A stretch of 55,769 nucleotides of DNA from Macrostomum lignano (GCA_002269645.1 NIVC01004196.1:1-55769); one strand, 5' to 3'. Positions 5,848-43,834 are shown, counted from the first letter of the stretch. Program-made: numbers and translations. The notes: generated by a model from the letters alone, not told the origin.

Positions 5848-6258
5848 TTAGGCTCGACCCTCAACTTTCACTTTTTGCACGGCAACAAAATGATCGCTAG
5901 CCGAGGTGATTAGAAACCGCAGGTGCCAGACGTTAATTTTCTTTTTCAAAGGAATGCTGGCCGTGTTGAAGCTGCCCTCAGCCTGGTCAAGATCCTCCTC
6001 GCACAGGGGATCAAAGTTCTCGCCGTCCTGATTGGGGCACATGAACACTTCCATGTGTTGGATATTCACGTGCGACAGACTAATGCTGCTGATCTCCATC
6101 TGCGAGTTGAAGCTGATGACGAACTCCTGCGGGAAGAGGCCCGTTGACATCCAGAATTCTTTGGGATCGTCGGTTAAAATAAAGTCCGGCCGATGGTTGG
6201 GATCGGATGAGGTTGCCACGGTAACCATGGCGCTCTCTGGATTAGCGACATCAAACAT
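5848..6258 (-). CDS. IFT25: Intraflagellar transport protein 25 (HSPB11), intronless, 136 aa
   Basis: MFDVA...VATSSDPNHRP...FWMSTGLFPQEFVISF...HLRFLITSASDHFVAV matches the IFT25 family. The true ATG is at 6258; the 23 upstream codons of the track ORF cross a splice acceptor. Confidence 0.9.
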   Translation of the reverse strand: MFDVANPESAMVTVATSSDPNHRPDFILTDDPKEFWMSTGLFPQEFVISFNSQMEISSISLSHVNIQHMEVFMCPNQDGENFDPLCEEDLDQAEGSFNTASIPLKKKINVWHLRFLITSASDHFVAVQKVKVEGRA

Positions 6259-6265
6259 TAGTCGG

Positions 6266-6280
6266 CTGCAGAGGAGGCAT
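6266..6280 (-). promoter_or_regulatory. Splice acceptor (cctcctctgcag) 7 nt before the IFT25 ATG
   Basis: Pyrimidine tract plus CAG followed by ccgactaATG; may be a cis 5'UTR intron acceptor or a trans-splice site. Confidence 0.55.
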
Positions 6281-8774: not shown

Positions 8775-17533
<8,759 letters not shown>

Positions 17534-20500: not shown

Positions 20501-21283
20501 ATTCAAACTTTTGTATTATAATCAGTCTTAAGTCATAAAGGTATACAAGTTAAATACCAAATATATTCTTTGAATTGTCAACCCAATTTACAAAATATTA
20601 ATACAACTAAACAAGGTTTATTTAACCAATTTTAATTTTGTAAATGCTGTTTTTAAATGAATTTGTAGCTGCATTTATTAAATTTCAGATGGCTTAAGCA
20701 TTTGTATGAAAAATGATAATCTTATCTTAGAAACTTTTGTGATATCCATTGTACTAACAATTAAAACTATGAATTAAAAATAGATCAAAATTAGTTTCAT
20801 TAAATAAATATATAAAACAAATATAAAGGAACAATTTGTTACAGAAAAATATTTTTATAAACTAAGACTGGTTCTTTATCTTTCTATTAAAAATGACTAA
20901 GAAATTTAAAAAGTGTTCACATGTATCAATAAGAATCTTATCATAATGTTCATATTTCCCTCCTATCTAGACAATAAGAGAATATTATAAGTAGTTATAA
21001 TGTTAATGTTCTATGTGTAAAAATTAACCTCTAATACCAAGTTGTCTTAAAATTTTATCACTAAGTAGGAATCTAGCAAAAATGCATAAACATCAAAGGA
21101 AATACCAACTATTTCATAGACAGGCACCTTAATTTCTAACAAGGAAGAAGCATAAATTATAGCAATTTAATTATAACAAAAATTTAATCTACCTTAAACC
21201 ACAATTGATTTACAATTGCAATTTTTTTAAAGCTTTCATTTGAATTTCAAGTAATCCCTTTTACTATGCCTTTTCATTTGCAG

Positions 21284-24200
21284 CATTTGACAGGCACAGG
21301 ACAGTCTCAGGGGTCTTGCATACCTGGTAAATATGGTTTTGTGCCTAATTTACCTGAATGTATAATTGCGTATTAAATTTTCTATTGGAATAGTTGCCAA
21401 TAGTTTATTTATATCATTTTTATAGATTGTACAGACCAGCAAGATTGTTCAGAAAGCCAGTGCAGTATTCCTAATGATGTGATTTCCCAGCCAGAGGTAA
21501 TCATCTGTGTATTCATAACTTCTTGAGTTCAAGTTTTCATTTAATATAAATACATCAAATTTGGAATGCATTCCAGAAAAGGTTAAAGAAAAGCGATATT
21601 AATGGTGAGTTAGGCAATAGGAATAATTAGCCTACTTATGAATTGGTATTTGTGCATGGAATGTTGAAGCCAATATTTTCCTACCTTTTGCAGACTCCCG
21701 CTACCTACTGTGGGTCAGCAATCTCACCGACGAGGTCAAAGCTGCTCATCTCAAGGAACTCTTTAGCCAGTATGGCCGCGTTGTGTCTACAAAAATTGTT
21801 GCCAGGGCGGTGTCGGCCCAGACCGCTGATGGTATCTCTAGCAGGCAAGAGCGCTGCGGTTTAGTGCAGCTGGCCTCAGCAGAGGAAGTTGATAGGTGAG
21901 CAAAAATGAGACTCAAAGTTTTCTTTTAAAACTTTAAACTTGAACCAAATCTGTTAAACTGCAGGTGCCAACAGCAGCTCAACCAGTTGGAGTTTCATGG
22001 CCAGCAAATCAGTGTAGCCAGATCACCGCCCGTGGCGCCAAGACAGAAGAATGCTGACAAGGCCTGTAAAAATGACAAAGTGGCAACAGGGACAGCATCA
22101 ACTGTTTCTGAATCATTACCAGATTCTTCCTCTGATAAACGGCCGGACCCATTAACTGAGAGCAAAAAGGTGAGATGAATTATGTGCGTGTGTCAGGTGT
22201 GCATGGCCGCATGGGTCAGCTGTGCGTGGGTCAGATGTGTATATGTCAGGTGTGCGTGTGTGCGTGTGTCAGATGTGTATGTCAGGTGTGCGTGTGTCAG
22301 ATGTATATGTCAGATGTGTATATGTCAAGTGTGCGTGTGTCAGATGTATATGTCAGGTGTGCGTGTGTCAGATGTGTATACATGTATGTCAGGTGTGCGT
22401 GTGTCAGATGTGTATGTCAGGTGTGCGTGTGTCAGATGTGTATATGTCAGGTGTGCGTGTGTCAGATGTGCATGTGTCAGGTGTGCGTGGGTCAGATGTG
22501 TGTCAGATGTGCGTGTGTCAGATGTGTGTATGTCAGGTGTGCGTGTGTCAGGTGTGCGTGGGTCAGATGTGTGTATGTCAGGTGTGCGTGTGTCAGATGT
22601 GCATGTGTCAGGTGTGCGTGGGTCAGATGTATGTCAGATGTGCGTGTGTCAGATGTGTATATGTCAGGTGTGCGTGTGTCAGGTGTGCGTGGGTCAGGTG
22701 TGCGTGTGTCAGATGTGTGTCAGGTGTGCATATGTCAGATGTGCATGGGTCAGGTGTGCGTGGGTCAGGTGTGCGTGTGTCAGATGTATGTGTGTCAGGT
22801 TATCGCGTCTGACCCTCCCGCTAAGTTATCCACGTTTGAATCCGCTCGCGGCCACAATGCCACATTCATTTGGGTCCTGTGCATAAAAATTGGCCTGGGG
22901 CTTTGTGCGATTTGCACCCATGAGGCCCAATCCCCAAGACAGAGTGTACATGCCCTGCCGATTAGAAAGTCATGACTGCTTTTACATCCTGTGTATTGGC
23001 TTTAGTGCGTTTGACTACTTGCTTTTCCTTAATTCCTTTGCTTCCCTATCTAAGTAGTATGAAACGCGTGTTTACTTAGATTTATTATTTGCCATTCCAG
23101 CAAAGTCCAGCTGTTAACAAGCCGCCAGCCCCAGGAAAATCTGGGCTCCCGAAATCGCCGAACAAGTCGCAGCAATCGAAAGCCTCGTCGGAAAAAAGTA
23201 ATGCAGCCTACACAAAGAAGAAGCCTAGCTCGTCTTCTTCCGCCAAGTCTGCTTCTGCTTCTAAACCGGAAAAGGCTCGTCCTACACTGCTAATGTCCTA
23301 TTCGAAACAGCCAATTCCCGAGGAAGCAGCTTCTTCTAGTAGCGGCAGCAGGTCCACTAAAAGATACAGTAGTCATTCCGCAGCCCTGTCCCGCACGTCT
23401 GGCGCAGCGGCTAGGCGTCACAGAAAAAGCCGACTTCTGCGACAAGAACAACAGCAACAACAAAGCCAGGCGCCATATCCGGACTCGCCGCTTCCGAATC
23501 CGCCAGCCGAGTTGGATCATCCAATTCAGTGTCCTACGCTGCTGCATTCGGCTGCTTCCGTTCGTTCCGACGATCTGCGACATCTTCTCGAGTCGGCCAG
23601 ATGCGCTCGAGGCGGCGCTACCCAGCAGCCTTCGCCGTTGATGTCGCTGGGCGTTGCCGACTCCGCCCAGACCGCGCCTATCGGAGCCTGGCACAGGCAG
23701 CAGCATCACCATCATCAGTCGCCAAGCATTACTCAGCAACAAGAATTATTGCTAATGCAGCGGGAGATTCAGCGTGAGCATGAGCAACTGGAAGCCGAGC
23801 GTAGACAGCTCCAATGGGAGCGAGAGCGGGCGCTATCCGAGGAGCGCAGAGTGATGCGAGAACAGGAGGATTTTCGGCGAATGCGCGAGCAAATGGAACG
23901 CGAGTTGCGCGACAAATGGGAGCGCAAAAAATGGGAACGGGATCAGCGGTCGCGTAAAGATAGAAACCCCAGGTCTCGGTCCCGTTCGCGGTCCGGGCGG
24001 CGGGCCAGCCACTCTACGGCTCGCAGCAGGTGAGCGACAATTATCCCCAATTCCCAGACTGTCCATTAGAACTATCCCCAATTCCCAGACTGTCCATTAG
24101 AACTATCCCCAATTCCCAGACTGTCCATTAGAACTATCCCCAATTCCCAGACTGTCCATTAGAACTATCCCCAATTCCCAGAATGTCCATTAGAACTATC

Positions 24201-25685
24201 CCCAATTCCCAGACTGTCCATTAGAACTATCCCCAATTCCCAGACTGTCCATTAGAACTATTCCCAATTCCCAGACTGTCCATTAGAACTATCCCCAATT
24301 CCCAGACTGTCCATTAGAACTATTCCCAATTCCCAGACTGTCCATTAGTATTATCCTCAATCACCAGACTGTCCATTAGAACTATCCCCAATTCCCAGAA
24401 TGTCCATTAGAATTATCCCCAATCGTTGACTGTCCATTAGAACTATCCCCAATTCCCAGAATGTCCATTAAAATTATCCCCAATCGTTGACTGTCCATTA
24501 GAACTATCCCCAATTCCCAGACTGTCCATTAGTATTATCCCCAATCCCCAGACTGTCCATTAGAATTATCCCAAATCCCCAGACTATCCATTAGTATTAT
24601 CCCCAATCCCCAGACTGTCCATTAGTATTATCCTCAATCACCAGACTGTCCATTAGAATTATCCCAAATCCCCAGACTGTCCATTAGTATTATCCCCAAT
24701 CCCCAGACTGTCCATTAGAATTATCCCCAATCCCCAGACTGTCCAGTAGAATTATCCCAAATCCCCAGACTGTCCATTAGTATTATCCCCAATCCCCAAA
24801 CTGTCCATTAGTATTATCCCCAGACTGTCCTTAAGAATTATCCCTAATTCCCATACTGTCCGTTAGAAGTCCCCAAACTGTTGATTAAGATTATTCCCAA
24901 CCGATCGCCTATCAGAATCCCTGAAAAAATAGTAATACAGCAGTATACAACAGTTCTATTCGGAAGCTGAACCCCATCAATTGGTATCGATTGGTGACAA
25001 AGAGCGCCAATCGATATCAACTTCCGTCGGCCGCAAACCCTGTTGGCGGTCATTGGCCAAGCCAAACAGGACAAAAAACATTGCAGCTGGCGGTCACGAG
25101 GGGAGGGAATTAAACATTCTTGATTGACAGCTTCCAACAGTAAAAGTTTAATAAAAAACGCGTAAGCCTCTTAATATCTGGTCGCATCCAGGCGAGTGCT
25201 ATTTTCTCTGAACAGCGATTCGTACTAAGAGGCACAATTATTGTTTTGTGATTTTATTTAGTTATACTACTGATAGTAAGTTAGCTAAACTCGCGCATTT
25301 TGTTATTATTTTTTTATCAAGTTGGGATCCCTCGTCTTCATCGCGAGACCGTCGCCGGAGCAGCCGTCGGCGAAGTCGCAGCCGCAGTCGCAGCAGCCGT
25401 CATCGCTACGAGCACCGTCGCAGTCCGTCGGGTCCAACACAGCCCTGGCCTAGCGGATCGGCGGCTTCCACTACTAATTATTCCGGCCAGCATCAGCCAG
25501 ACGCTTACTATAGGCACGTCAATGCGCAGGAGCTTCTGCAACAACAACAGCAGCAGCAACAGCGGCCTCCGCCCATGTTTCTAGGGGCTGGTCATTCTGC
25601 TATTGGCACTGGTCAACAGTCAGTCAATCAGTCGTCATTATCTTCTAATAGCTTCTATAATGTCGCTCGGGGCCACTTTTATTGA
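21284..25685 (+). CDS. SAFB: SAFB/SLTM-like RRM protein with Arg/Glu- and RS-rich C-terminus; exons 21284-21326, 21426-21496, 21577-21604, 21694-21895, 21965-22169, 23101-24029, 25322-25685; no start ATG found
   Basis: RRM LWVSNLTDEVKAAHLKELFSQYGRVVSTKIV...CQQQLNQLEFHGQQISV resembles the SAFB RRM, followed by the ERERALSEERR...REQMERE coiled coil. All seven exons chain in phase with GT-AG sites. Confidence 0.75.
22180..22800 (+). repeat. ~14-16-bp TG-rich minisatellite (tgtcagatgtgcgtg) in a SAFB-like intron
   Basis: Starts about 10 nt after the donor at 22170; explains the Cys/Val-rich ORFs. Confidence 0.95.
24038..24850 (+). repeat. 31-bp minisatellite (attagaactatccccaattcccagactgtcc) in the last SAFB-like intron
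   Basis: 31-nt period; starts about 10 nt after the donor at 24030. Confidence 0.95.
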
Positions 25686-25799
25686 TTAATATTTAGTTGC
25701 TATGATATCTATGGATTGAACCCGTTTTCTCCACTTTATGGAACTCTCCGCCCTTTTCTAAAAGTCTGTCCCTTCGTAAAATTACTCCACACTTCATGG

Positions 25800-27118
25800 A
25801 ATTCCTCGCCTCATAGAATTCTCCGTCTCTTTGTAGAATTCTCCTCCCCTTCATAGAATTCTCCGTCTCTTTTTAGAATTCTCCACCGCCTCAAAGAATT
25901 CTCCACCGCCTCATAGAATTCTCCACCGCCTCATAGAATTCTCCACCGCCTCATAGAATTCTCCGTCTCTTTGTAGAATTCTCCTCCCCTTCATAGAATT
26001 CTCCGTCTCTTTTTAGAATTCTCCACCGCCTCAAAGAATTCTCCACCGCCTCATAGAATTCTCCACCGCCTCATAGAATTCTCCACCGCCTCATAGAATT
26101 CTCCGTCTCTTTGTAGAATTCTCCTCCCCTTCATAGAATTCTCCGTCTCTTTTTAGAATTCTCTACCACTTTATAGAATTCTCCGTCTCTTTGTAGAATT
26201 CTCTACTGCTTCATAGAATTCTCTACTGCTTCATAGAATTCTCCGTCTCTTTGTAGAATTCTCCTCCCCTTCATAGAATTCTCCGTCTCTTTTTAGAATT
26301 CTCCACCGCCTCATAGAATTCTCCACCGCCTCATAGAATTCTCCACCGCCTCATAGAATTCTCCACCGCCTCATAGAACTCTCCGTCTCTTTGTAGAATT
26401 CTCCTCCCCTTCATAGAATTCTCCGTCTCTTTTTAGAATTCTCTACCACTTTATAGAATTCTCCGTCTCTTTGTAGAATTCTCTACTGCTTCATAGAATT
26501 CTCTACTGCTTCATAGAATTCTCCGTCTCTTTGTAGAATTCTCCTCCCCTTCATAGAATTCTCCGTCTCTTTGTAGAATTCTCCTCCCCTTCATAGAATT
26601 CTCCGTCTCTTTGTAGAATTCTCCTCCCCTTCATAGAATTCTCCGTCTCTTTGTAGAATTCTCTACTGCTTCATAGAATTCTCCGTCTCTTTGTAGAATT
26701 CTCCTCCCCTTCATAGAATTCTCCGTCTCTTTTTAGAATTCTCCGTCTCTTTGTAGAATTCTCCTCCCCTTCATAGAATTCTCCGTCTCTTTGTAGAATT
26801 CTCCTCCCCTTCATAGAATTCTCCGTCTCTTTTTAGAATTCTCCGTCTCTTTGTAGAATTCTCCTCCCCTTCATAGAATTCTCCGTCTCTTTGTAGAATT
26901 CTCCTCCCCTTCATAGAATTCTCCGTCTCTTTTTAGAATTCTCCGTCTCTTTGTAGAATTCTCCTCCCCTTCATAGAATTCTCCGTCTCTTTTTAGAATT
27001 CTCCGTCTCTTTGTAGAATTCTCCTCCCCTTCATAGAATTCTCCGTCTCTTTGTAGAATTCTCCTCCCCTTCATAGAATTCTCCGTCTCTTTGTAGAATT
27101 CTCCTCCCCTTCATAGAA
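25800..27118 (+). repeat. 20-bp minisatellite with a GAATTC in every unit, downstream of the SAFB-like stop
   Basis: Unit variants agaattctccgtctctttgt / agaattctcctccccttcat / agaattctccaccgcctcat keep a 20-nt register. Confidence 0.95.
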
Positions 27119-27569
27119 GTCTTGGTTCTCTTGGTATCTTGCTAAGTAATATGTTTTTTTACTCGAATAGTTGCCCTAACAACGCAATAATGTCAACAAT
27201 TACAACTTTTCACACTTTTAATTTTTGGGACAAAAATTGCCGCCTCTATTCTATCTGTATTGTTTTGTTATTACTGCGAACTGTGACCCAATTTGGGTCA
27301 ATAGGTTTTGTTTGTTTTTCTGTGACAATTTCACTCGCCAAGTATATAATTAAATTGAGTATCTCGCATTTATAATTCCGCTACAGATTGATTGAATATG
27401 AAAAACTGCAGGGTTTCAAATCGAGATGTAGATGGTACAGGTCTTGCTATCAAGTTGTATTTTTATATATTATATTCGTCTATCGTTCTCAATACGAAAT
27501 TATAGCATCAAATGCTGATCCATAATGTATATGTGGAAAAGTAGTTCATTCCTACAGCAGTTAACGATA

Positions 27570-27575
27570 AATAAA
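27570..27575 (+). terminator. Candidate polyadenylation signal for the SAFB-like gene
   Basis: AATAAA in AT-rich sequence after the 20-bp array. Confidence 0.35.
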
Positions 27576-27885
27576 TATAATTTTATCAGTAGTAGTCTTA
27601 GGTAATAGTATTCTTAATTACAACCGTCTATTGTACTTTATCATCTGTTTATCCTTATTGCTATTGTCGTCATTGGTCTGATTAATTTGATTAACAATGT
27701 GAAAGCGAGTCGATTCTGGAATTGAAAACATTCATATTTTTCACCTATAAATTTATTATGCGTTTGTTAGAAAACTCAAAGTAAAAACATTTTGTTGATA
27801 AAGTATTGCCCTGTCTCTTTGCTTCATCTATTTCTGTTTAGTGTCTAGGATTGTGTTTGGCTTTAATATTTGAAATGCCTTGTAG

Positions 27886-29560
27886 CTGTCTGGTAGATAG
27901 TGAGGCTAATTATAGGTGAACTGTCTGGTAGATAGTGAGGCTCATCATGGATGAACTGTCTGGTAGATAGTGAGGCTCATTATGGATGAACTGTCTGGTA
28001 GATAGTGAGGCTAATTATAGGTGAACTGTCTGGTAGATAGTGAGGCTCATTATGGATAAACTGTCTGGTAGATAGTGAGGCTAATTATAGGTGAACTGTC
28101 TGGTAGATAGTGAGGCTCATCATGGATGAACTGTCTGGTAGATAGTGAGGCTCATTATGGATGAACTGTCTGGTAGATAGTGAGGCTAATTATAGGTGAA
28201 CTGTCTGGTAGATAGTGAGGCTCATTATGGATAAACTGTCTGGTAGATAGTGAGGCTAATTATAGGTGAACTGTCTGGTAGATAGTGAGGCTCATCATGG
28301 ATGAACTGTCTGGTAGATAGTGAGGCTAATTATAGGTGAACTGTCTGGTAGATAGTGAGGCTCATCATGGATGAACTGTCTGGTGGATAGTGAGGCTAAT
28401 TATAGGTGAACTGTCTGGTAGATAGTGAGGCTAATTATAGGTGAACTGTCTGGTAGATAGTGAGGCTCATCATGGATGAACTGTCTGGTAGATAGTGAGG
28501 CTAATTATGGTGAACTGTCTGGTAGATAGTGAGGCTCATCATGGATGAACTGTCTGGTAGATAGTGAGGCTAATTATAGGTGAACTGTCTGGTAGATAGT
28601 GAGGCTCATTATGGATGAACTGTCTGGTAGATAGTGAGGCTAATTATAGGTGAACTGTCTGGTAGATAGTGAGGCTCATCATGGATGAACTGTCTGGTAG
28701 ATAGTGAGGCTCATCATGGATGAACTGTCTGGTAGATAGTGAGGCTAATTATAGGTGAACTGTCTGTTAGATAGTGAGGCTCATCATGGATGAACTGTCT
28801 GGTGGATAGTGAGGCTAATTATAGGTGAACTGTCTGGTAGATAGTGAGGCTCATTATGGATGAACTGTCTGGTAGATAGTGAGGCTCATCATGGAAGAAC
28901 TGTCTGGTAGATAGTGAGGCTCATTGTGGATAAACTGTCTGGTAGATAGTGAGGCTCATCATGGATAAACTGTCTGGTAGATAGTGAGGCTAATTATAGG
29001 TGAACTGTCTGGTAGATAGTGAGGCTCATCATGGATAAACTGTCTGGTAGATAGTGAGGCTAATTATAGGTGAACTGTCTGGTAGATAGTGAGGCTCATT
29101 ATGGATAAACTGTCTGGTAGATAGTGAGGCTAATTATAGGTGAACTGTCTGGTAGATAGTGAGGCTCATTATGGATGAACTGTCTGGTAGATAGTGAGGC
29201 TCATTATGGATGAACTGTCTGGTAGATAGTGAGGCTCATCATGGATGAACTGTCTGGTAGATAGTGAGGCTCATCATGGATGAACTGTCTGGTAGATAGT
29301 GAGGCTAATTATAGGTGAACTGTCTGTTAGATAGTGAGGCTCATTATAGGTGAACTGTCTGGTAGATAGTGAGGCTCATCATGGATGAACTGTCTGGTAG
29401 ATGGTGAGGCTCATTGTGGATGAACTGTCTGGTAGATAGTGAGGCTCATCATGGATAAACTGTCTGGTAGATAGTGAGGCTCACTATGGATGAACTGTCT
29501 GGTAGATAGTGAGGCTCACTATGGGTGAACTGTCGCTCATCAGTAGATAGTGAGGCTCAT
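27886..29560 (+). repeat. 35-bp minisatellite (ctgtctggtagatagtgaggctcatcatggatgaa) upstream of SRSF7
   Basis: About 47 units with two main variants (ctaattataggtgaa / ctcatcatggatgaa). Confidence 0.95.
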
Positions 29561-29637
29561 CATGAATGAGCTTTCTATTCCTTATGAATATTATAATCAA
29601 CCAAAATCTGTCCTAAACTGCAGCTCTAACAGCCACC

Positions 29638-30132
29638 ATGTCCAAAAGTGAAATGGGACGCCGTGTTTACGTCGGCGACTTGCCTGACGGGACTGCTGAA
29701 AGCGACATCAAGCGCTCGCTGCGCCGCTACGGCAGCCTGGAGTCGGTCTGGGTGCACGGCAAAGGCACCTACGCTTTCGCCACCTTTGCTGATCGACGCG
29801 ACGCCGAAGACGCTGTGCGCGACGCGCCGCGCGTCAATGGGCGCCGAGTCCGGATGGAATTGGCGCGCAACGAGCGCCGGGCAGCTGGCGCCGGGCCGCG
29901 CAACGATCGCTGCTACCAGTGCGACCGGGTCGGCCACTATGCCTACGAGTGCCCTGAGCGCGGTGGTAGCGGTGGCGGCGGCGGCGGCGGCCGTGGCGGC
30001 GGTGGCGGCGGCGGAGGCGGACGTCGTCGCAGCCGCAGCTTCAGCCGGAGCCGCAGCGACAGCCGGGGCCGGAGCTACAGTCGCAGCCGGAGCCGCAGCC
30101 GCAGCCCGAGGCGTCGCGATGGTCACCGCTAA
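29638..30132 (+). CDS. SRSF7: SR splicing factor of the SRSF3/7 (9G8) family, intronless, 164 aa
   Basis: RRM (RVYVGDL...YAFATFADRRDAEDAV), CCHC zinc knuckle CYQCDRVGHYAYEC, Gly linker, RS domain; Kozak gccaccATG. Confidence 0.9.
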   Translation: MSKSEMGRRVYVGDLPDGTAESDIKRSLRRYGSLESVWVHGKGTYAFATFADRRDAEDAVRDAPRVNGRRVRMELARNERRAAGAGPRNDRCYQCDRVGHYAYECPERGGSGGGGGGGRGGGGGGGGGRRRSRSFSRSRSDSRGRSYSRSRSRSRSPRRRDGHR

Positions 30133-30689
30133 ATAGTCGCGAGTAATTAATTAATTAATTAAAGCAAGTGGGTGTTTACATTAGTGTTGTCTTACCCATT
30201 TTTTTAAAACCCCGTCTGTCCATCCTTCAAGTAGCACGAGGCTCTGCTGCATGTGGCTTTTGCTGTTGTAATTGCTATGATTAGTTACTATAGTATTGTG
30301 GTGTTTAGCTATCCCTTTGAAAAATACTGCTTACTGTTGTGAGTTTTCCTTCTATCCATTCTACTATTGCTATTATTAATACCGTTTTTAGCGCTGCTGT
30401 GGGTCAGTAGTCTGGTTGGACTATTATTTTCCTAATATTTTCAATAGCAACATATTCATTTTCTTTTGTTTGCGTTACTTTTTCTAATCCGTAACAGCCA
30501 GTGTTGTTCGCAATGAAAAGTTTAGGAGATAATTTGGTAACTGATTTGCGAATTGCAGAGTGTGCTCCATCTCCTGGGGCGAGTCTGCGCCCGGAGAGAG
30601 CGGTTTAGAGTTCCGAGTTCGAATCGAATCGAAAAGCCAATTCGAACGAGTCGAAATTTGTGTTCGAGTTCGATTGAGAGTCGGAACAA

Positions 30690-31090
30690 CCGAGAATAGG
30701 TTTTGCTCCGAGCCGGGGTTGAGTTCGAGTCGAACAGCCTGAGAACAGGTTCGAACGATTGGGATCTGAACTCGAGTCGAGCAGCCTGAGAGCAGGTTCG
30801 AGCGAGTCAGGGCTGGGTTCGAGTCGAGCAGCCTGAGAACAGGTTCGAACGATTGGGATCTGAACTCGAGTCGAGCAGCCTGAGAGCAGGTTCGAGCGAG
30901 TCAGGGCTGGGTTCGAGTCGAGCAGCCTGAGAACAGGTTCGAGCGAGTCGGGGGTTGAGTTCGAGTCGAGCAGCCTGAGAACAGGTTTGAGCGAGTCGGG
31001 GGTTGAGTTCGAGTCGAGCAGCCTGAGAACAGGATCGAAAGAGTCGAAATTTAGAGGTTCGAATGCAGACCTGAGAACAAATTCGAACCG
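30690..31090 (+). repeat. 47-bp minisatellite (gagtcgagcagcctgagaacaggttcg...)
   Basis: Period 47 at 30727, 30774 and 30821. Confidence 0.85.
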
Positions 31091-31387
31091 ATTAAAGTTC
31101 GAGAGTTCGGTTGCTAGTCGAACGGTCGAGTTAATGTGAGTCAGTGGCTCAAGATGTGATGAAAATTATTATTTATTGGGATAATTGGTTCCTTGGATTT
31201 AGGCTCCTACTCGGAACCGCTCCCCAGTTCGGGTGGCAAGATCGAACTGTTGTGCCTCGGTGAGAATTCATTCATTAATCGCTTTTCTCTGACCCACCCC
31301 TTTTGACTTATAATTCTGTGAATCATCTCCCCCCGTTTAGCAGCAGCGAACGCAGTGTGTTATTCATTGTTTGTATTGTTTTTATGT

Positions 31388-31393
31388 AATAAA
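31388..31393 (+). terminator. Candidate polyadenylation signal for SRSF7
   Basis: AATAAA after a U-rich stretch, about 490 nt before the FTSJ1 acceptor. Confidence 0.4.
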
Positions 31394-31892
31394 ATTAACG
31401 TCACTGTCTACTATAAGTAGGCTGAATCGGCTAATTCAACTACGGGTTTCTACGGGTTTATATGAAAAAATATAAACAAAATTCAACTTACGCGCGGCAA
31501 TTCGCTGCCAAGCTAATATTGGACTCGACTTGAGGATTGACAGTTGGTCTGGCTTATTTCATTGGATTTTTTGTATTATAGTTGGATTATGACATCGCGT
31601 AATACCCTTGTAGCTGGGGTTGAGTTCGTTTATGGTAATTTATAATTGGTAACTAGGCGTACTAGATTAACTATAACTTAGTTTATGTTGGCTTAATAGA
31701 TATGGATTAATAACATTACCATTATCCAATGTGCATGCATTAATTGCATAATCGGGTCACTTTAATCAGAAGTACATCGTGTTCTGTAACTCCATTTTAT
31801 GCGCTAATATTCGCAAAATCAGCGATATTATAAAGTCTTACATCTGTGCTTAGTACGTGACCTTATTTGACCTGAACCGTTCAGGCAGAACT

Positions 31893-34800
31893 ATGGGCAA
31901 GTCTAGCAAAGACAGGCGCGACATCTATTATCGCCTGGCCAAAGAGGAGGGCTGGCGCGCTAGAAGCGCTTTCAAACTGCTGCAGTTGGATCAGGAGTTT
32001 GGCCTGCTGGATCCGGCTAAGGTTAAACGGGTTGTGGACCTGTGCGCTGCGCCTGGAAGCTGGAGTCAGGTGTGTGCCGCTGAAAATACCCCTTGATGGT
32101 TGTTTGCCAGAGGGGGGCGGGTCGTTTGGATGATTTAGAACAGATGCTGAGAGCAAGACTAGATGCAGAATGATGCCAAATAGAAACTGAGACTGTAGAC
32201 TCTCAGGATGATGAAGAATAGAAGCTGAGACTGTAGACTATAAGGATGATGAAGAATAGAAGCTGAGACTGTAGACTATAAGGATGATGTAGAATAGAGG
32301 CTGAGACTGTAGACTCAGGATGATGTAGAATAGAGGCTGAGACTGTAGACTCAGGATTATGTAGAATAAAAGCTGAGACTGTAGACTCAGGATTATGTAG
32401 AATAGAGGCTGCGACTGTCGACTCTAAGGATGATGTAGAATAGAGGCTGAGACTGTCGACTCTAAGGATGATGTAGAATAGAGGCTGAGACTGTCGACTC
32501 AGGATGATGTAGAATAGAGGCTGAGACTACTCGTAGATTCTCAGAATGATGTAGTAGAAAGTAGAGGCTAAGGATGGATTCTTAGGATGATGTAGAATAG
32601 AGGCTGAGACTGTAGACTCTCTGGATGATGTAGAATAGAGGCTGCGACTGTCGACTCTAAGGATGATGTAGAATAGAGGCTGAGACTGTCGACTCTAAGG
32701 ATGATGTAGAATAGAGGCTGAGACTACTCGTAGATTCTCAGAATGATGTAGTAGAAAGTACAGGCTAAGGATGGATTCTTAGGATGATGTAGAATAGAGG
32801 CTGAGACTGTAGACTCTCAGGGTGATGTAGAATAGAGGCTGTGACTGTAGACTCTCAGGGTGATGTAGAATAGAGGCTGTGAGTGAAGCCGAAGATCATC
32901 AAAGGTGCATCCGTATCACTCCCACCGCAGGTGCTGGTCAGCCGGCTGAACCCGACCGGCGCTGAAGGTCCCGACGCTCCGGCGCACATAGTCGCCGTCG
33001 ACTTGCAGGCGATGGCGCCGATAGCAGGAGTGGCTCAGCTTCAGGGCGACATCACCAAGACGGCCACCGCCCGCGGCATCATCGACCTGCTTGGCGGCAA
33101 GCCGGCCGATCTGGTCGTCTGCGACGGCGCGCCGGATGTCACCGGGCTGCACGACATTGACGAATACGTGCAGAGCCAGCTGCTCATTGCCGCCCTCAAC
33201 ATCGCCACCTTCGTGCTGGGGCCCGGAGCAACTTTTGTTGCTAAAATCTTCCGCGGGCGCGACGTGTCTCTGCTGCATGCCCAGTTGAAAATCTTCTTCC
33301 AGTCCGTGTCCATCGCCAAGCCGCGATCGTCACGAAATTCCAGCCTGGAAGCCTTCGCCGTGTGCCAGTGCTACCGGCCTCCCATTGGCTACGAGCCAAA
33401 TCTGTCTAATCCCCTGCTAACCGGCTATTACGATTTTGACTTGAGCCAGCTGCGCGGCTCCAACCGGGTTGTTGTGCCGTTTGTAGCCTGCGGCGATCTC
33501 AGCGCCTACGACGCTGATAGGAACTATCCTTTGTCCGATGCGCACCAGCACTCAGAGCCAGCCCAGCCGCCTATCAGTCCGCCATATCTGGAGGCCGCCG
33601 AATTGAAACGCTCCGATCGTCTGGCTAAGCCTTCGTCTGAATCTGCTGCCGCTGACGCTGCCGCCGCCGCTGACTCAGCTGCCACGGCCGCTGCAGCAGT
33701 TGCCGCCGCCGACGCCGCTGCGGCCGCTGTCCGTTGCACGGCCGGCTCGGTGACGCTGGCTTTTCCTGAGCTGCCGCCCCGTACGAGCTGCGGCTACACA
33801 ATGTCCTCCTTCCTGCGGCCACAGGTACCGATTGGGGGATAGCGGCACCTTGCCTGTAGCCTGTAGAATCAACTGTAACAGACCCATTGATAGTCTGTCA
33901 AAAAGCCTGTAAAATCAACTGTTACAGGCCCATAAACAGCCTGTCAAAAAGCCTGTAGTATCAACTGTAACAAACCGATAGACAGCCTGTCAAGAGTCTG
34001 TAGAATCAACTGTAACAGACCCATTGATAGTCTGTCAAAAAGCCTGTAAAATCAACTGTTACAGGCCCATAGACAGCCTGTCAAAAAGCCTGTAAAATCA
34101 ACTGCAACAGGCCCATAGACAGCCTGTCAAAAAGCCTGTAGAATCAACTGTAACAAACCGATAGACAGCCTGTCAAGAGTCTGTAAAATCAACTGCAACA
34201 GACCCATTGATAGTCTGTCAAAAAGCCTGTAAAATCAACTGTTACAGGCCCATAGACAGCCTGTCAAAAAGCCTGTAAAATCAACTGCAACAGACCCATT
34301 GATAGTCTGTCAAAAAGCCTGTAAAATCAACTGTTACAGGCCCATAAACAGCCTGTCAAAAAGCCTGTAGTATCAACTGTAACAAACCGATAGACAGCCT
34401 GTCAAGAGTCTGTAGAATCAACTGTAACAGACCCATTGATAGTCTGTCAAAAAGCCTGTAAAATCAACTGTTACAGGCCCATAGACAGCCTGTCAAAAAG
34501 CCTGTAAAATCAACTGCAACAGGCCCATAGACAGCCTGTCAAAAAGCCTGTAGAATCAACTGTAACAAACCGATAGACAGCCTGTCAAGAGTCTGTAAAA
34601 TCAACTGCAACAGACCCATTGATAGTCTGTCAAAAAGCCTGTAAAATCAACTGTTACAGGCCCATAGACAGCCTGTCAAAAAGCCTGTAAAATCAACTGC
34701 AACAGACCCATTGATAGTCTGTCAAAAAGCCTGTAAAATCAACTGTTACAGGCCCATAAACAGCCTGTCAAAAAGCCTGTAGTATCAACTGTAACAAACC

Positions 34801-35614
34801 GATAGACAGCCTGTCAAGAGTCTGTAGAATCAACTGTAACAGACCCATTGATAGTCTGTCAAAAAGCCTGTAAAATCAACTGTTACAGGCCCATAGACAG
34901 CCTGTCAAAAAGCCTGTAAAATCAACTGCAACAGGCCCATAGACAGCCTGTCAAAAAGCCTGTAGAATCAACTGTAACAAACCGATAGACAGCCTGTCAA
35001 GAGTCTGTAAAATCAACTGCAACAGACCCATTGATAGTCTGTCAAAAAGCCTGTAAAATCAACTGTTACAGGCCCATAGACAGCCTGTCAAAAAGCCTGT
35101 AAAATCAACTGCAACAGACCCATTGATAGTCTGTCAAAAAGCCTGTAAAATCAACTGTTACAGGCCCATAAACAGCCTGTCAAAAAGCCTGTAGTATCAA
35201 CTGTAACAGACTCATAGACAGCCTGTCAAGAGTCTGTCAAAAAAGCCTGTAGAGTAACTGTAACAGACCCACAGACAGCCTGTCAAGAGTCCGTAGTCTG
35301 TACCCTTGCAGCCCGCATCATCTCGTCCCCACCCCCACTCGCCCATCCAAACGGAGCGGCAGGGCGGTCCAACCTACGCGTTCACCTACGGCTTCACGGC
35401 CACGACCTTGACTAGCAGCAGCACAGCCGCGGCCATCGCCTCGCAGATCAGCTTAACCAGCTGCGACATTGACAAGCTCAGACTGGAGGAGGCCCGGGCC
35501 GACATGCCAGAGACTCTGCATTCCAAAGAGGACTTGCTGGCCGGGCTGGCTCAGGCCCGGGCTCTGGCCGTGTCCGCCGACCTGCCTCTGCCCAAGACTG
35601 CTGGCGCTGATTGA
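31893..35614 (+). CDS. FTSJ1: tRNA (C32/G34) 2'-O-methyltransferase FTSJ1/Trm7; exons 31893-32069, 32931-33824, 35312-35614; 457 aa
   Basis: [66 protein letters not shown] give the complete K-D-K-E tetrad. Junctions CAG|gtgtgt, gcag|GTG, CAG|gtaccg, gcag|CCC are all phase 0. Confidence 0.92.
32127..32883 (+). repeat. ~36-38-bp minisatellite in FTSJ1 intron 1 carrying box C-like and box D-like motifs
   Basis: About 20 units of aggATGATG(a/t)agaatagaggCTGAgactgtagactc. Confidence 0.9.
33857..35290 (+). repeat. 45-46-bp minisatellite with a 412-bp (9-mer) higher-order repeat in FTSJ1 intron 2
   Basis: Variant cccataaac recurs at 33929, 34341, 34753 and 35165 (spacing 412). Confidence 0.92.
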
Positions 35615-35689: not shown

Positions 35690-35980
35690 TATCTATCATG
35701 AGACGCGAATAGGGGTTCTCGGCTTGATCGGCTTAGTATACCAACTTCACTGAGCCCTTATTGGCTGCGTACAGCTGTTCAGTCCAAGGACTGGGGGGTC
35801 GCCACACAGCCTCAGTTACCCCAGCTAAAGCTGGCACCCATTTTACAGTTGGGTGAACTGAAGCAATGCGCAGAGTTAAGTGTCTTGCTCAAGGACACCA
35901 AATTGTTCCGATTGGGATCGGGAATCGAACCCCCGACCTTCAAGTTGTAAGTCCGACACTCTAATCACTAGGCTACAAGG
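35690..35980 (-). mobile_element. tRNA-derived SINE with CORE-like domain
   Basis: Head TGTAGCCTAGTG...GGTTCGATTCC followed by gtccttgagcaagacacttaactctg...ctgtaaaatggg, resembling the MIR/CORE domain; sister copy at 54442. Confidence 0.8.
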
Positions 35981-36749
35981 AATATAACGCCTAACAAATG
36001 AGCAATATTTCCAGCTCCATGTTGAGAGTGGGGGTTTCAACTGTTGAATGTAGAAAAATAGATACTTAAAAAGTTTTCTTTTTACTTTTTTTGCAATAGC
36101 ATTATATTTCATATACTTTACTTGATACTCTACTGACAGTAGAAAGATAACGTAATCTATATACGCTACTATTAGTAAAAATATTAGTTTTTTTAGACAC
36201 GACAAATCAATGAAAGACAGAACGTAATTCTAAAACGCTGTAATATTCTTTGCAATCCGAAAGTCTGCACTGTTAACTGTAACTGATAAAACCATTGGTC
36301 GGTGTATAAAACCAGAATTTTGTTTGGTTTTAAATATAAATTGCATGTAAATCGACACTCAAACTCGCGCATTCAAAGTTTAATGTATAACTTGTGTCGT
36401 AGGATTGTAATATTATTTAATCAGGTTTTTAGAGCAAATTTATGGTTAAGGAAATATTAGTGTTTATTATTTATGCGCTGCTTAAACTTCTGTCATTTAT
36501 GCTTGACCCTTAGGTGGTAAATATCAAGAACTACCTATTATTATTTAGTTTTCTTGCATATATACTAGTAGAATAAATAACTTGATATCTCACGAGCAAA
36601 AAATACTCTCATCTACTCTTTTTTCAAAGACTAAAGGCTGCAGCAAAATTTGAATGCCTCAAATCTTAGTACGTGTGCATGGCAAAGCAAAAGAGAAAAG
36701 GCCGCGCCCCAGCCGAGCAGATAAACAGTTGGCCTTCCTCTTGCCCGCT

Positions 36750-37964: not shown

Positions 37965-38160
37965 CTGTGTCTTCGGAGTGACGATACCGTATCGTCGCTT
38001 TGTTCTCCAGTGTCTTCGGAGTGACAATCCCCGCGTATTTTAGTGTCTTCAGAGTGACAGTACCGTATTTTATAGTGTCTTCAGAGTGAGAGTATCGTAT
38101 TTTAGTGTCTTCAGATTGAAAATCCCGTATTTTAGAGTCTTCAGATTCACAATACCGTCT
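37965..38160 (+). repeat. Degenerate ~30-bp repeat (gtgtcttcrgagtgac...)
   Basis: About 6 copies. Confidence 0.65.
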
Positions 38161-38301
38161 TTCATCGTTTATTTTCTACTGCATGGGTTTGCTTGCCTGG
38201 CCACCTTTCTTAGATTTAAAATCATATTAATGCTGTAAACACTTCTTTATTTTAGCTATGTCAGCTGGTTCTGCTTAATGATATCTTTAAGAATCTGTGT
38301 A

Positions 38302-39255
38302 CGAGGGGCATTCAAAAAGTTTTGGCAACTGCATATGCAGATATACTTTGGCTCAAGCAAAATGCACTAAATTTTAGGAATGTCTTTAGTAACATGCCTG
38401 ATACCAACGTATAAACTTTCAGCTCAATAGCTTCACCCGTTATTGCACAATTCACAGCTAACCATAACTAAGTTTCAGCTTCTGACATAATATGGAAAAT
38501 ATCAGCTCAGAAAATGCGCGCTTCTACATCTTCATGCGCGTACAACTTGGAGAAAACGCCACCAAAATTCATGCCGACTTAGCACAGGTGATAGGGGATC
38601 AAGCTCCATCTTATAGAACTGTTGCGCAATGGATTGAGGCTTTTGGCGCCGGCAGGAGCAGCCTCAGTGACAACCCTCGATCTGGGAGGCCGAGCACAGC
38701 CGTGACCAAGAGCAACATTGACGCTGTGCAATCGCTGGTGGCTGAGGACCCAAACATTTCTGTTGCCATACTGAGCCAGACACTTGGCATATCTGATAGC
38801 AGCGTTTTCACCATCCTGCATGATCAGCTGGGTCTCAGAAAAATCACAGCTCGTTGGGTGCCGCATCAGCTCACTGAGGAGCAGCGCCAGGAGCGGGTTC
38901 GCTGCAGTCAGGAGTTCTTGCGCTGCTTTGGTTCTGGCGGCACCAAGCGCCTCTCTGACATCGTCACATCGGACTTAGCTCCGTGCGACTTCTGGGCCTT
39001 CCCGAAATTGACGGAGAGGCTGGCTGGGCGCCGATTTCAGAGGCCGCAAGACCTGGCCCGCGCTATCAATTCAGAGTTGAGGGCATTCACTGAATCGGAG
39101 TACCGTGGCGCCTTTGATTCGTGGATACGGAGGCATCAGAAGTGCATAGAGCGCGGCGGAGACTACATAGAAGGACTGTAAACCCTTACTTTTAGAATAA
39201 TAAGCTTCCACTAGATTTTAGTTGCCTGTTGCCAAAACTTTTTGAATGCCCCTCG
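38302..39255 (+). mobile_element. Mariner DNA transposon, 954 bp, internally deleted
   Basis: Perfect 28-bp TIRs cgaggggcattcaaaaagttttggcaac (38302-38329 and 39228-39255); TA target duplication on both sides. Confidence 0.95.
38492..39181 (+). CDS. Mariner transposase lacking most of the catalytic domain, 229 aa, open frame
   Basis: Two HTH regions, RSGRP, and WVPHQL linker are present; IVT is then joined directly to SDLAPCDF, so the first two Asp motifs are missing. Confidence 0.85.
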   Translation: MENISSENARFYIFMRVQLGENATKIHADLAQVIGDQAPSYRTVAQWIEAFGAGRSSLSDNPRSGRPSTAVTKSNIDAVQSLVAEDPNISVAILSQTLGISDSSVFTILHDQLGLRKITARWVPHQLTEEQRQERVRCSQEFLRCFGSGGTKRLSDIVTSDLAPCDFWAFPKLTERLAGRRFQRPQDLARAINSELRAFTESEYRGAFDSWIRRHQKCIERGGDYIEGL

Positions 39256-39268
39256 TATAATATATTTA

Positions 39269-40765
39269 TCTCTAACTATAAAAATCAAAACTCTGTGTGT
39301 GTGTGTGTGTGTGTCTGTCTGTGTGTGGACAATTTTGATCGCTATGGACTCCCAAACCGCTCAACCAAATGACACCAAATTTTACACTATAGATTATAGA
39401 GTAAAGGGAAGAGGTGGAGAGAGGAAAGAGATGAGATTGTAGAGATGAGTGAGATGAAAGGAAATATGAGAGAGTAGAGTAGAGATGAGAGATGAAGGAA
39501 GAGAGAGCAGAGTGCGGAGAGACGAGAAAAGAGAATAGAGGGGGAAGAGTATAGAAGAGGGAAGAGAAGAGAGGAGTAAGGAAAGAGAGGAGTCAGACAA
39601 GGGGAAAGAGAAGAGTACACAGTAGAGAGGAGAGTAGAGATGACAGAAGAGAGAGGGAAATGAGAGAGCAAAGATGAGAGTGAACAGACGATAAGAGAGG
39701 AGAGAGGAGAGTGAGAGAGAAGAGAGAAGACAAGAGAGGGAGAGAGTATAGAAGAGAGAAGAGAAGAGACGAGAAGAAAGAAGAAAGGATCGAGTCCTCC
39801 TGAGTCAAAAAGGGGAAAGAGAGGAGTACAAGGGGAGAGAGGGGAGAGAACATATGAGAGTAAAGATGACAGATAAGAGAGGGGAGATGAGAGAGCGGAA
39901 ACGAGAGTGAACAGACGAGAGATGGGAGAGTAGAGAGAAAAGAGGAGAGATAAGAAATAAGGGATGAGAGGTGGAGACAAGGGAGAATGAGAAGTGAATG
40001 AGGAGAGAGGAGGGGAAGGGAGAGAATCGAGAGGACAGGGGAAATTGGTGAAAAGGACGAGAGAGGAGAGGAAAGAGGGGAGAGAAGAGAGAGAAGAGAG
40101 ATAGGATAGGAGAGAGCAGAGAGATGAGAGGAGAGAGTGGACAGAGGAGAGGAAAGAGTTGAGAGAAGAGAGGAAAAAGGAGAGAGTAGAGATAAGGAAA
40201 GTGTTGAGAGAGGGTAGAGTAAGGAGTGAGAAGAGAGGTGAGGGAAGAGAGAGCAGAGAGCAGAGGGAAGAGAGAGTAGAGAGCAGAGAGAAATGAGAAA
40301 AGATAAAACAGGAGAAAGGAGATATGAGAGACCAGAGACCAGAGCGAAGAGAGGAGAAGAGAGAGAAAAGAATAGAGGGGAGAGGGAAGAGACGAGAGAG
40401 GAGACGAGAGAGGAGAGAAGAAAGAAGAGATAAGAGGGAAGAGAGAGAAGAGACGAGAGAAGATAGGAAACAGAAAAGAAGATGGAAGTTTCAAAGGATG
40501 CAAAGGACATAGGGAGAGGCAGAGGTACGTAGAGGCCAGAGTTTGCCTGACATTCTGCGCAGCACCCCAGCCAACAATATCAATGTTTGCCTCAAATCCT
40601 AATTTTACATGAATGTACACACTATTTTATGTTTAACTCTATCCTAACTATTAACAAGGGAACAAGTTTTTGTTTGAGTTTTACCTCAGATTTTAGAATA
40701 CATGCAAAAATAATTCCGGGGAATGGAGTACCCCGGGTTCAAAATCCGCGGGTTTCAACAGCTTG
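39269..40765 (+). mobile_element. Non-autonomous Helitron-like element, copy 1
   Basis: 5' TC (a|tctctaactataaaa) with (TG)n; 3' GC-rich hairpin ccccgggttcaaaatccgcggg then CTTG; internal GA-rich tract. Confidence 0.75.
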
Positions 40766-43489
<2,724 letters not shown>

Positions 43490-43834
43490 TAATATATATA
43501 TAACAATAGTGTGTATATTCAGCTATATTATAAATTTTGTTGATGATTACATCAACCTGTTTTACTTGTGCTGTAAACCATTTATTTTAGCTCATCTTTT
43601 CAGGGGTGTCGAAACCGGGGGGGGCATGGGGGGGGCATGGGGGGTGGAGCCCCGGCCCCCCCACTTTTTAGCATGATCCTGCAAGTGCCATTTTTGAATT
43701 TTAAGCAAGTGTCGGCCGGTTTTTGGCTTTGGCTTTTCTGAGTCTTGGAAGCTAAGGGTACCAGCTGATATAATAGTTCATGTTGTTCTCAATCCCATTC
43801 CACTACAGTTTTTATCTAATGTGCCTAAGCCTAG

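What the first reader, a model, noticed from the sequence alone, without database searches (positions are those of the whole stretch)
21284..35614. Candidate trans-spliced RNA-processing operon: SAFB-like, SRSF7, FTSJ1
Seen: three co-oriented RNA-processing genes in a row. SRSF7 and FTSJ1 each have a splice acceptor 5-8 nt before the ATG (taacag|ccaccATG at 29632; ttcag|gcagaactATG at 31884), and no upstream donor or 5' exon was found. Each acceptor lies a few hundred non-repeat nt after a candidate AATAAA of the previous gene (27570, 31388). Established: spliced-leader trans-splicing resolves polycistrons in flatworms, nematodes and tunicates; SAFB proteins bind SR proteins. Inference: one promoter co-expresses a chromatin/splicing scaffold, its SR partner and a tRNA anticodon methyltransferase.
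Basis: partly seen in the sequence, partly recalled or inferred. Interest (0 to 1): 0.7.

Follow-up and report, generated by a model that had tools for sequence, protein, structure and literature searches.

The report
Flatworm spliced-leader gene cluster, already annotated
Three same-strand RNA-related genes on a scaffold of the flatworm Macrostomum lignano fit that species' well-documented spliced-leader operon pattern, and the middle gene is already published as trans-spliced, so this is an ordinary, largely known case.

Summary
The window is the whole Macrostomum lignano scaffold NIVC01004196.1 (Mlig_3_7). This species is published to trans-splice about 30% of its genes to one 35-nt spliced leader and to keep about 15% of its genes in operons whose spacers are inflated by repeats.

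The three co-oriented genes are real:
- an RRM/RS-rich protein (619 aa, 7 exons, no SAP domain, so "SAFB-like" is not supported);
- a single-exon SRSF7-like gene;
- an FTSJ1/TRM7 orthologue.

The SRSF7-like copy in this window (Mlig003447.g2) is flagged TRANSSPLICED in a published table. Its deposited 5'-partial ORF puts the transcript 5' end at 29624-29626, right after CTGCAG. SRSF7-like and FTSJ1 share a transcriptional-unit prefix in all three paralogous loci. Repeat-adjusted spacers (384-958 and 474-530 nt) meet the published <1 kb operon criterion.

Not shown:
- co-transcription with the RRM gene, which has a different unit prefix in one paralogue;
- any functional coupling.

An AG 5-8 nt before an ATG occurs at 29% of ATGs here, so that observation alone is chance-level. 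Verdict: a plausible 2-3 gene SL-resolved operon of a known kind, of low novelty.

The parts
21266..25685 (+). Gene 1: RRM plus R/E-rich plus RS-rich protein, 619 aa. Exons 21266-21326, 21426-21496, 21577-21604, 21694-21895 (RRM), 21965-22169, 23101-24029, 25322-25685. The deposited annotation of this scaffold covers only 23293-25685 (366 aa).
   Evidence: All introns of the gene model are GT-AG, and the product is 98% identical to P0125 (BOX15_Mlig024401g1). RRM_1 is the only domain and there is no SAP domain.
25792..27122 (.). Tandem repeat (20/40/100/140-bp periods, about 1.3 kb) just after the gene 1 stop codon. It lies in the presumed 3' UTR or spacer.
   Evidence: TRF.
27570..27575 (+). 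The only AATAAA between the gene 1 stop and SRSF7. Candidate poly(A) signal of gene 1.
   Evidence: Pattern scan. Its use is not shown.
27886..29534 (.). 35-bp tandem repeat, 47 copies. Each unit carries GTGAG, the species' consensus 5' splice-donor motif. It inflates the spacer before SRSF7.
   Evidence: TRF. 48 GT[AG]AG motifs counted.
29618..29623 (+). CTGCAG, matching the published trans-acceptor motif [T/C]TNCAG; the exon would start at 29624. This is the best-supported SL acceptor for this copy. In both paralogues the CAG is ATG.
   Evidence: Motif match. The deposited 5'-partial ORF 'LTATM...' (P0122) starts at 29626, so the transcript 5' end is 29624-29626. TRANSSPLICED flag for Mlig003447.g2. 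Paralogue difference.
29627..29632 (+). It is conserved in all three paralogues but does not match [T/C]TNCAG.
29638..30132 (+). Gene 2: SRSF7-like, single exon, 164 aa (RRM, CCHC zinc knuckle, Gly run, RS tail). Published as trans-spliced and as a stringent neoblast gene.
   Evidence: Pfam. Best named relatives are SRSF7/7a at 44-45% identity. Published table.
30133..31393 (+). SRSF7-like 3' UTR, about 1.2 kb, containing a 47/94-bp tandem repeat (30709-31046) and the only AATAAA of the spacer (31388-31393).
   Evidence: TRF. PAS scan. An annotated transcript length of 1730 nt puts the 3' end near 31.35 kb if the transcript is unspliced from 29624 (arithmetic).
31355..31892 (+). Spacer between SRSF7-like and FTSJ1, 474-530 nt, with no tandem repeat and no GT[AG]AG.
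   Evidence: It is 99.6-99.8% identical in the paralogues.
31893..35614 (+). Gene 3: FTSJ1/TRM7 tRNA 2'-O-methyltransferase. Exons 31893-32069, 32931-33824 and 35312-35614 (the deposited model starts exon 3 at 35354). Its introns are filled with tandem repeats.
   Evidence: Pfam FtsJ. 66-69% full-length identity to named FTSJ1 proteins and 100% to the M. lignano protein. Gene model. Deposited as BOX15_Mlig003447g3.

Best explanation
This is an ordinary Macrostomum lignano spliced-leader gene cluster of the operon type already described genome-wide for this species.

Shown:
- The middle gene (SRSF7-like) receives the 35-nt spliced leader according to the published annotation.
- SRSF7-like and FTSJ1 were assembled into one transcriptional unit.
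- The spacers meet the published repeat-adjusted criterion for an operon.

Inferred:
- RNA polymerase II starts upstream of the RRM gene (about 21.2 kb) or, at the least, upstream of SRSF7-like. It reads through kilobase spacers that are mostly tandem repeats.
- Each upstream mRNA is released by cleavage and polyadenylation, near 27.6 kb and near 31.35-31.41 kb.
- Each downstream mRNA gets its cap by SL trans-splicing at an AG a few to some tens of nt before its ATG. For SRSF7-like in this copy that is 29624. For FTSJ1 the site is unknown, probably upstream of 31851.
- The grouping is positional, not a functional RNA-processing module.
For: - Organism and scaffold identified.
- Published background. 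[quoted passage not shown] Repeats inflate operon spacers. The criterion is a repeat-adjusted distance <1 kb with the downstream gene trans-spliced. The acceptor motif is [T/C]TNCAG (PMC8629364).
- Mlig003447.g2 (this scaffold's SRSF7-like) and Mlig014652.g3 are flagged {TRANSSPLICED} (PMC5816591 Suppl. Table 2).
- The deposited 5'-partial ORF LTATM... places the 5' end at 29624-29626, directly after CTGCAG. That matches the motif and is identical to the cis-acceptor of exon 5 of gene 1.
- SRSF7-like and FTSJ1 share a prefix in three loci: Mlig003447.g2/.g3, Mlig014652.g3/.g4 and Mlig009963.g1/.g2. Prefixes denote transcriptional units that TBONE cuts at SL and poly(A) evidence (PMC5730564).
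- Gene order and orientation are the same in all three paralogous loci, with nothing annotated in between.
- Repeat-adjusted spacers are 384-958 nt and 474-530 nt.
- No RNA genes or SL RNA gene interrupt the region.
Against: - No SL read, polycistronic RNA or promoter datum could be examined directly here. No RNA-derived contigs were found.
- FTSJ1's trans-splicing status is unknown. That is also what would be seen if the unit had been cut only at the SRSF7 poly(A) site.
- The RRM gene has a different unit prefix (Mlig024401.g1) in one paralogue.
- The spacer before SRSF7 holds 48 donor-consensus motifs, which by the classical outron rule should favour cis-splicing.
- TATA-like hexamers sit 32 nt before 29624 and 64 nt before the FTSJ1 ATG.
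- Spacers of about 400-500 nt are far from the 100-nt mode of M. lignano operons.
- FTSJ1 and the RRM gene do not appear with SRSF7-like in the stored part of the stringent-neoblast list. That file is truncated, so this is weak evidence.
Confidence: 0.55

Rival explanations
1. Three independently transcribed neighbouring genes. SRSF7-like is trans-spliced as a monocistronic gene with its own promoter and outron, as about 60% of trans-spliced M. lignano genes are. FTSJ1 has its own promoter in the 0.5-kb spacer. The shared 'transcriptional unit' reflects read-through or merged RNA-seq coverage across close neighbours.
For: [quoted passage not shown]
- Raw spacers are 3.9 kb and 1.8 kb from stop codon to ATG.
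- TATAAT at 29592 and TATAAA at 31829.
- 48 donor-like motifs upstream of the SRSF7 acceptor.
- FTSJ1's annotated 5' end is not at an ATG-proximal acceptor.
- The RRM gene is in a different unit in one paralogue.
- FTSJ1 is absent from the stored stringent-neoblast rows, while both SRSF7-like clusters are present.
Against: - The same unit prefix for SRSF7-like and FTSJ1 appears independently in three loci.
- Repeat-adjusted distances are below the published 1-kb threshold.
- A TATA box 32 nt before 29624 would leave no room for an outron, yet the gene is flagged trans-spliced.
- TATA-like hexamers occur 1.3-1.7 times per kb anyway.
- The authors note that units tend to split at repeats, which would explain the separate prefix of gene 1.
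Confidence: 0.35
2. A dedicated RNA-processing operon in which one promoter co-expresses a SAFB-type scaffold, its SR-protein partner and a tRNA methyltransferase because they work together.
For: All three products are RNA-related. SRSF7-like is neoblast-enriched, and neoblast genes are often trans-spliced and in operons.
Against: - Gene 1 has no SAP domain and no detectable relatives outside Macrostomum for its C-terminal two thirds, so it is not a supported SAFB.
- The window's SRSF7-like gene is a divergent paralogue. The best human hit is E=1e-9, and a closer SRSF7 homologue exists elsewhere in the species at e=5e-40.
- FTSJ1 acts on tRNA, not on mRNA splicing (established knowledge of TRM7/FTSJ1).
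- The published analysis reports enrichment for conserved genes, not functional modules.
Confidence: 0.07

Closest known systems
Macrostomum lignano SL trans-spliced operons (Wudarski et al. 2017; Grudniewska et al. 2018; Ustyantsev & Berezikov 2021)
   Same: Same organism and same scaffold set. Same-strand adjacent genes, with the downstream gene flagged TRANSSPLICED. Spacers inflated by tandem repeats but <1 kb after subtraction. A YTNCAG acceptor. A shared transcriptional-unit prefix.
   Different: Nothing differs in kind. Spacers of about 400-500 nt non-repeat are longer than the roughly 100-nt mode. SL use by FTSJ1 and inclusion of gene 1 were not verified here.
Caenorhabditis elegans operons (SL2-resolved polycistrons)
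   Same: Polycistronic pre-mRNA resolved by 3' end formation plus SL trans-splicing. Mostly 2-3 genes, and often housekeeping or germline/proliferation genes.
   Different: C. elegans uses a specialised SL2 and spacers of about 100 nt without repeats. M. lignano has a single SL that ends in AUG, and its spacers can be kilobases of repeats.
Parasitic flatworm operons (Schistosoma, cestodes; PMC12582326)
   Same: [quoted passage not shown] Intercistronic regions of tens to hundreds of nt, with chimeric models spanning up to several kb.
   Different: Candidate operons there are defined at <=300 bp. No SRSF7/FTSJ1 pair is mentioned in that paper's main text.

Membership tests
M. lignano SL-resolved operon (criteria of Ustyantsev & Berezikov 2021) | Immediately adjacent genes in the same orientation, not interrupted by an opposite-strand gene | tested here: met
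   Only these genes are annotated on the + strand between 21.2 and 35.6 kb. Nothing lies between them in the window or in either paralogous locus. ORFs in the spacers are repeat-derived. No Rfam or tRNA hits.
M. lignano SL-resolved operon (criteria of Ustyantsev & Berezikov 2021) | Downstream gene is SL trans-spliced (SL-containing reads at its 5' end) | tested here: inconclusive
   SRSF7-like meets this according to the published flag {TRANSSPLICED} for Mlig003447.g2 and Mlig014652.g3, and its 5'-partial ORF begins right after CTGCAG. FTSJ1 has no flag retrievable. Its complete deposited ORF argues against the acceptor at 31885. Reads themselves could not be examined.
M. lignano SL-resolved operon (criteria of Ustyantsev & Berezikov 2021) | Repeat-adjusted intergenic distance below 1 kb | tested here: met
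   Gene 1 to SRSF7-like: 958 nt from the stop codon, or 384 nt from about 20 nt after AATAAA 27570. SRSF7-like to FTSJ1: 474-530 nt. Only TRF repeats were subtracted.
M. lignano SL-resolved operon (criteria of Ustyantsev & Berezikov 2021) | One polycistronic precursor from a single upstream promoter | tested here: inconclusive
   The shared unit prefix for SRSF7-like and FTSJ1 in three loci supports a common assembled precursor. Gene 1 has another prefix in one locus. Promoter use is not testable with these tools.
SRSF7 (9G8) type SR proteins | N-terminal RRM, one CCHC zinc knuckle, C-terminal RS domain | tested here: met
   RRM_1 at residues 10-65, zf-CCHC at 91-107, and an RS-rich tail seen directly. 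Best named relatives are SRSF7/7a at 44-45% identity. One-to-one orthology is doubtful, because a closer SRSF7 homologue exists in the species.
FTSJ1 / TRM7 tRNA (Cm32/Nm34) 2'-O-methyltransferase | FtsJ methyltransferase domain with full-length similarity to FTSJ1 rather than to other FtsJ paralogues | tested here: met
   FtsJ domain across exons 1-2. 66-69% identity over 99-100% of the query to many proteins named tRNA (cytidine32/guanosine34)-2'-O-methyltransferase.
SAFB / SLTM scaffold attachment factors | N-terminal SAP domain plus central RRM plus R/E-rich region | tested here: not met
   Only RRM_1 (E=7.5e-8) was found in the full-length protein, and no SAP even at E<=1. PDB matches are generic RRMs. 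The C-terminal 366 aa finds only Macrostomum proteins. An R/E-rich stretch and RS repeats are visible, but they are not specific.

The most novel reading that the evidence does not exclude
The cluster might be a conserved, co-regulated neoblast RNA-processing unit. In it an RRM/RS protein, a divergent SRSF7 paralogue and FTSJ1 would be kept together by selection. The homeologous copies would have diverged in which trans-splice acceptor they use: CAG in this copy against ATG in the other two, at 29621-29623. That would make it a tractable case of acceptor turnover, and of how kilobase tandem repeats carrying donor motifs are tolerated inside an operon spacer.
Probability: 0.1. Interest if true: 0.35.

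Novelty: already known. Interest (0 to 1): 0.15.

Why it matters
It matters little beyond annotation. It confirms that raw-sequence reading can spot SL-operon architecture, but SL trans-splicing, repeat-inflated operons and the trans-spliced status of this very gene are already published for M. lignano.

Three modest points of value remain:
- A corrected full-length model for gene 1, which is truncated in the deposited annotation of this scaffold.
- A copy-specific difference at the likely SRSF7 acceptor.
- A spacer packed with donor-consensus motifs, which could serve as a test case for how trans-splicing outcompetes cis-splicing in this species.

Tried and rejected
- Exact look-up of the 164-aa SRSF7-like protein found nothing, because the deposited product is the 5'-partial 168-aa form.
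No such contigs exist for these proteins.
- Exact look-ups of my reconstructed 366-aa and 363-aa C-terminal products of gene 1 failed. I therefore could not confirm that the window's gene 1 is Mlig003447.g1.
- Supplement searches for FTSJ1 and for the gene IDs in four other papers gave nothing usable. The SRSF7 found in the 2016 eLife tables is a different, more canonical paralogue.
- I tried to place the transcript ends from the published lengths (1730 and 1674 nt). The window copy fits 29624 to about 31353. The paralogues fit only after assuming collapsed repeat units, which I rejected as numerology.
- Paralogue conservation of the spacers was uninformative. Exons, introns and spacers are all 94-100% identical.
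- A search for the SL sequence or an SL RNA gene in the window found none. Rfam and tRNA scans were empty.
- I looked for SAP-coding exons upstream of 21266. The region is AT-rich with no coding-like ORFs.


Full report
**Identity of the sequence.**
- The window has GC-rich exons in AT-rich, tandem-repeat-filled non-coding DNA.
- The FTSJ1 protein assembled from three exons is 100% identical over 296 aa to [quoted passage not shown].
- Contig look-ups show that the window is the entire 55,769-bp scaffold NIVC01004196.1 of assembly GCA_002269645.1 (Mlig_3_7), in + orientation.
- Two paralogous loci, on NIVC01000628.1 and NIVC01000768.1, carry the same four genes in the same order and orientation: RRM protein, SRSF7-like, FTSJ1, PDE6D. 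They are 93-100% identical outside the repeats.

**The three genes.**
- Gene 1 can be rebuilt as seven GT-AG exons, 21266-25685, giving 619 aa. It is 98% identical to the deposited 610-aa partial paralogue P0125.
  - The deposited annotation of this scaffold holds only the last 366 aa (23293-25685). The likely reason is that the transcript assembly broke at the tandem repeat in intron 5.
  - Its only Pfam domain is an RRM, and no SAP domain appears even at E<=1. PDB matches are generic RRMs. The C-terminal 366 aa finds only Macrostomum proteins. "SAFB-like" is therefore not supported.
- Gene 2 (29638-30132) has an RRM, a CCHC knuckle and an RS tail. Its best named relatives are SRSF7/7a at 44-45% identity. 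A closer SRSF7 homologue exists elsewhere in the species.
- Gene 3 is a clear FTSJ1/TRM7 orthologue.

- The quoted acceptor-like strings and both AATAAA are where stated.
- Such an AG is not remarkable. 29% of all + strand ATGs in the window have an AG placing an exon start 5-8 nt upstream, and 7.6% have a CAG.
- "No upstream donor" is wrong for SRSF7. The 35-bp repeat at 27886-29534 carries 48 copies of GT[AG]AG, the species' donor consensus, the nearest 74 nt before the acceptor.
- The spacer before FTSJ1 has none.

**What is known for this organism.**
- M. lignano attaches one 35-nt spliced leader, which ends in ATG, to about 30% of its genes. About 15% of genes are assigned to operons.
- Repeats inflate operon spacers. 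The published operational definition is adjacent same-strand genes, a trans-spliced downstream gene, and a repeat-adjusted distance below 1 kb.
- The enriched acceptor motif is [T/C]TNCAG (PMC8629364).
- In the genome paper, assembled "transcriptional units" were often precursor RNAs holding several genes. They were cut into genes at SL and poly(A) evidence. Units at least 95% identical share a name prefix (PMC5730564).

**Evidence specific to this locus.**
1. Supplementary Table 2 of PMC5816591 lists "Mlig003447.g2 {Length: 1730} {TRANSSPLICED} ... SRSF7" and "Mlig014652.g3 {Length: 1674} {TRANSSPLICED}". Both are in the stringent neoblast class. The window's FTSJ1 is BOX15_Mlig003447g3, so Mlig003447.g2 is this scaffold's SRSF7-like gene.
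2. The deposited SRSF7-like product of this scaffold is a 5'-partial ORF, "LTATMSKSE...", that starts at 29626.
   - With an in-frame TAA at 29614, this fixes the annotated transcript 5' end at 29624-29626, directly after CTGCAG.
   - CTGCAG matches the published motif and equals the cis-acceptor of exon 5 of gene 1.
3. SRSF7-like and FTSJ1 bear the same unit prefix in all three loci: Mlig003447.g2/.g3, Mlig014652.g3/.g4 and Mlig009963.g1/.g2.
4. Repeat-adjusted spacers are 384 nt (from about 20 nt after AATAAA 27570) to 958 nt (from the stop codon) before SRSF7-like. They are 474-530 nt before FTSJ1. Both are under 1 kb.

**What remains open or argues the other way.**
- I could not see any reads, and no RNA-derived contigs exist in the searchable collections.
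- FTSJ1's SL status could not be retrieved.
  - Its deposited ORF is complete. By the same logic as for SRSF7-like, the annotated 5' end must include the in-frame TAG at 31851-31853.
  - So it is not at 31885.
  - This fits a more upstream acceptor (exon start 31823 or 31836) or a unit cut only at the upstream poly(A) site.
- Gene 1 has a different prefix (Mlig024401.g1) on NIVC01000768.1. The authors warn that units split at repeats.
- In the two paralogues the window's CAG at 29621-23 reads ATG. Those copies must use another acceptor, and their complete ORFs imply 5' ends upstream of the TAA.
- TATA-like hexamers lie 32 nt before 29624 and 64 nt before the FTSJ1 ATG, against a background of 1.3-1.7 per kb.
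- FTSJ1 and gene 1 are not in the stored, truncated part of the stringent neoblast list.

**Mechanism judged most likely (0.55).**
- A polycistronic precursor covers at least SRSF7-like and FTSJ1, and probably starts upstream of gene 1.
- It is resolved by polyadenylation near 27.6 kb and near 31.35-31.41 kb, and by SL trans-splicing of the downstream genes.
- Shown: the SL status of SRSF7-like, the shared unit, and the spacing.
- Inferred: co-transcription, the single promoter, and SL use by FTSJ1.
- The main rival (0.35) is independent promoters, with SRSF7-like trans-spliced as a monocistronic gene.

**Comparison and novelty.**
- This is a case of the published M. lignano operon class, not a variant of it.
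- The trans-spliced status of the middle gene and the unit relationship are already in the public annotation.
- It works like C. elegans and parasitic-flatworm operons, but with one SL and repeat-inflated spacers.
- Interest is low.

Noticed in passing
window 29621-29623 vs L001 7589-7591 and L002 7630-7632: The CAG of the best acceptor (CTGCAG|) in this copy reads ATG in both paralogous loci (CTGATG|CTCTAACAG). The homeologous copies cannot share this trans-splice site. The variant also recreates the last three bases of the spliced leader in the genome.
   Followed up: partly
window 27886-29534: Each unit of the 35-bp tandem repeat (47 copies) contains GTGAG, the species' consensus 5' splice donor. 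That puts 48 donor-like sites in the presumed outron or spacer of a gene published as trans-spliced.
   Followed up: partly
window 21266-23292: The deposited annotation of this scaffold omits the first five exons of gene 1, including the RRM. It starts the protein at an internal Met (23293). A full 619-aa model is recoverable.
   Followed up: yes
window 35309-35356: The deposited FTSJ1 product (443 aa) implies an exon 3 start at 35354, preceded by CG and not AG. A canonical CAG acceptor at 35309-35311 keeps the frame and adds 14 aa. The paralogues' products use yet another acceptor ('PQ|GGPTY').
   Followed up: partly
window 22212-22800, 24039-24868, 32179-32879, 33858-35237: Nearly every intron of the three genes is filled with its own kb-scale tandem repeat (periods 15/30, 31, 38/121/197 and 183/229/412 bp). 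Copy numbers differ between paralogous loci.
   Followed up: no
window about 38140-43490: A stretch of about 5.3 kb is absent from the paralogous locus L001. It contains a mariner/Tc1-type transposase remnant (ORF 38492-39181; HTH_48, HTH_Tnp_Tc3_2) and long Ser/Leu-coding low-complexity repeats.
   Followed up: partly
window 10068-14177 (-), 45323-50000 (+), 52212-53210 (-), 5848-6327 (-): Other genes on the scaffold:
- 6-phosphofructo-2-kinase/fructose-2,6-bisphosphatase on the - strand, divergent from gene 1 across a 7-kb AT-rich region.
- PDE6D (GMP_PDE_delta), about 9.7 kb downstream of FTSJ1 on the + strand.
- A cytoplasmic actin on the - strand.
- A weak F5/8 type C domain ORF, below Pfam's gathering score.
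   Followed up: partly
window 35740-35985 and 54437-54718: Sequences that look like tRNA-derived SINE fragments by eye (a 'gggatcgggaatcgaaccc...' T-arm-like stretch). ARAGORN calls no tRNA. The first lies just after the FTSJ1 stop and is poorly conserved in L002 (83%).
   Followed up: no
window 21284: If the spliced leader (which ends in ATG) were joined at 21284, its ATG would be in frame with gene 1. The genomic ATG at 21266 is in the same frame, and the deposited paralogue transcript starts at the equivalent of 21291-21293, not after an AG.
   Followed up: partly
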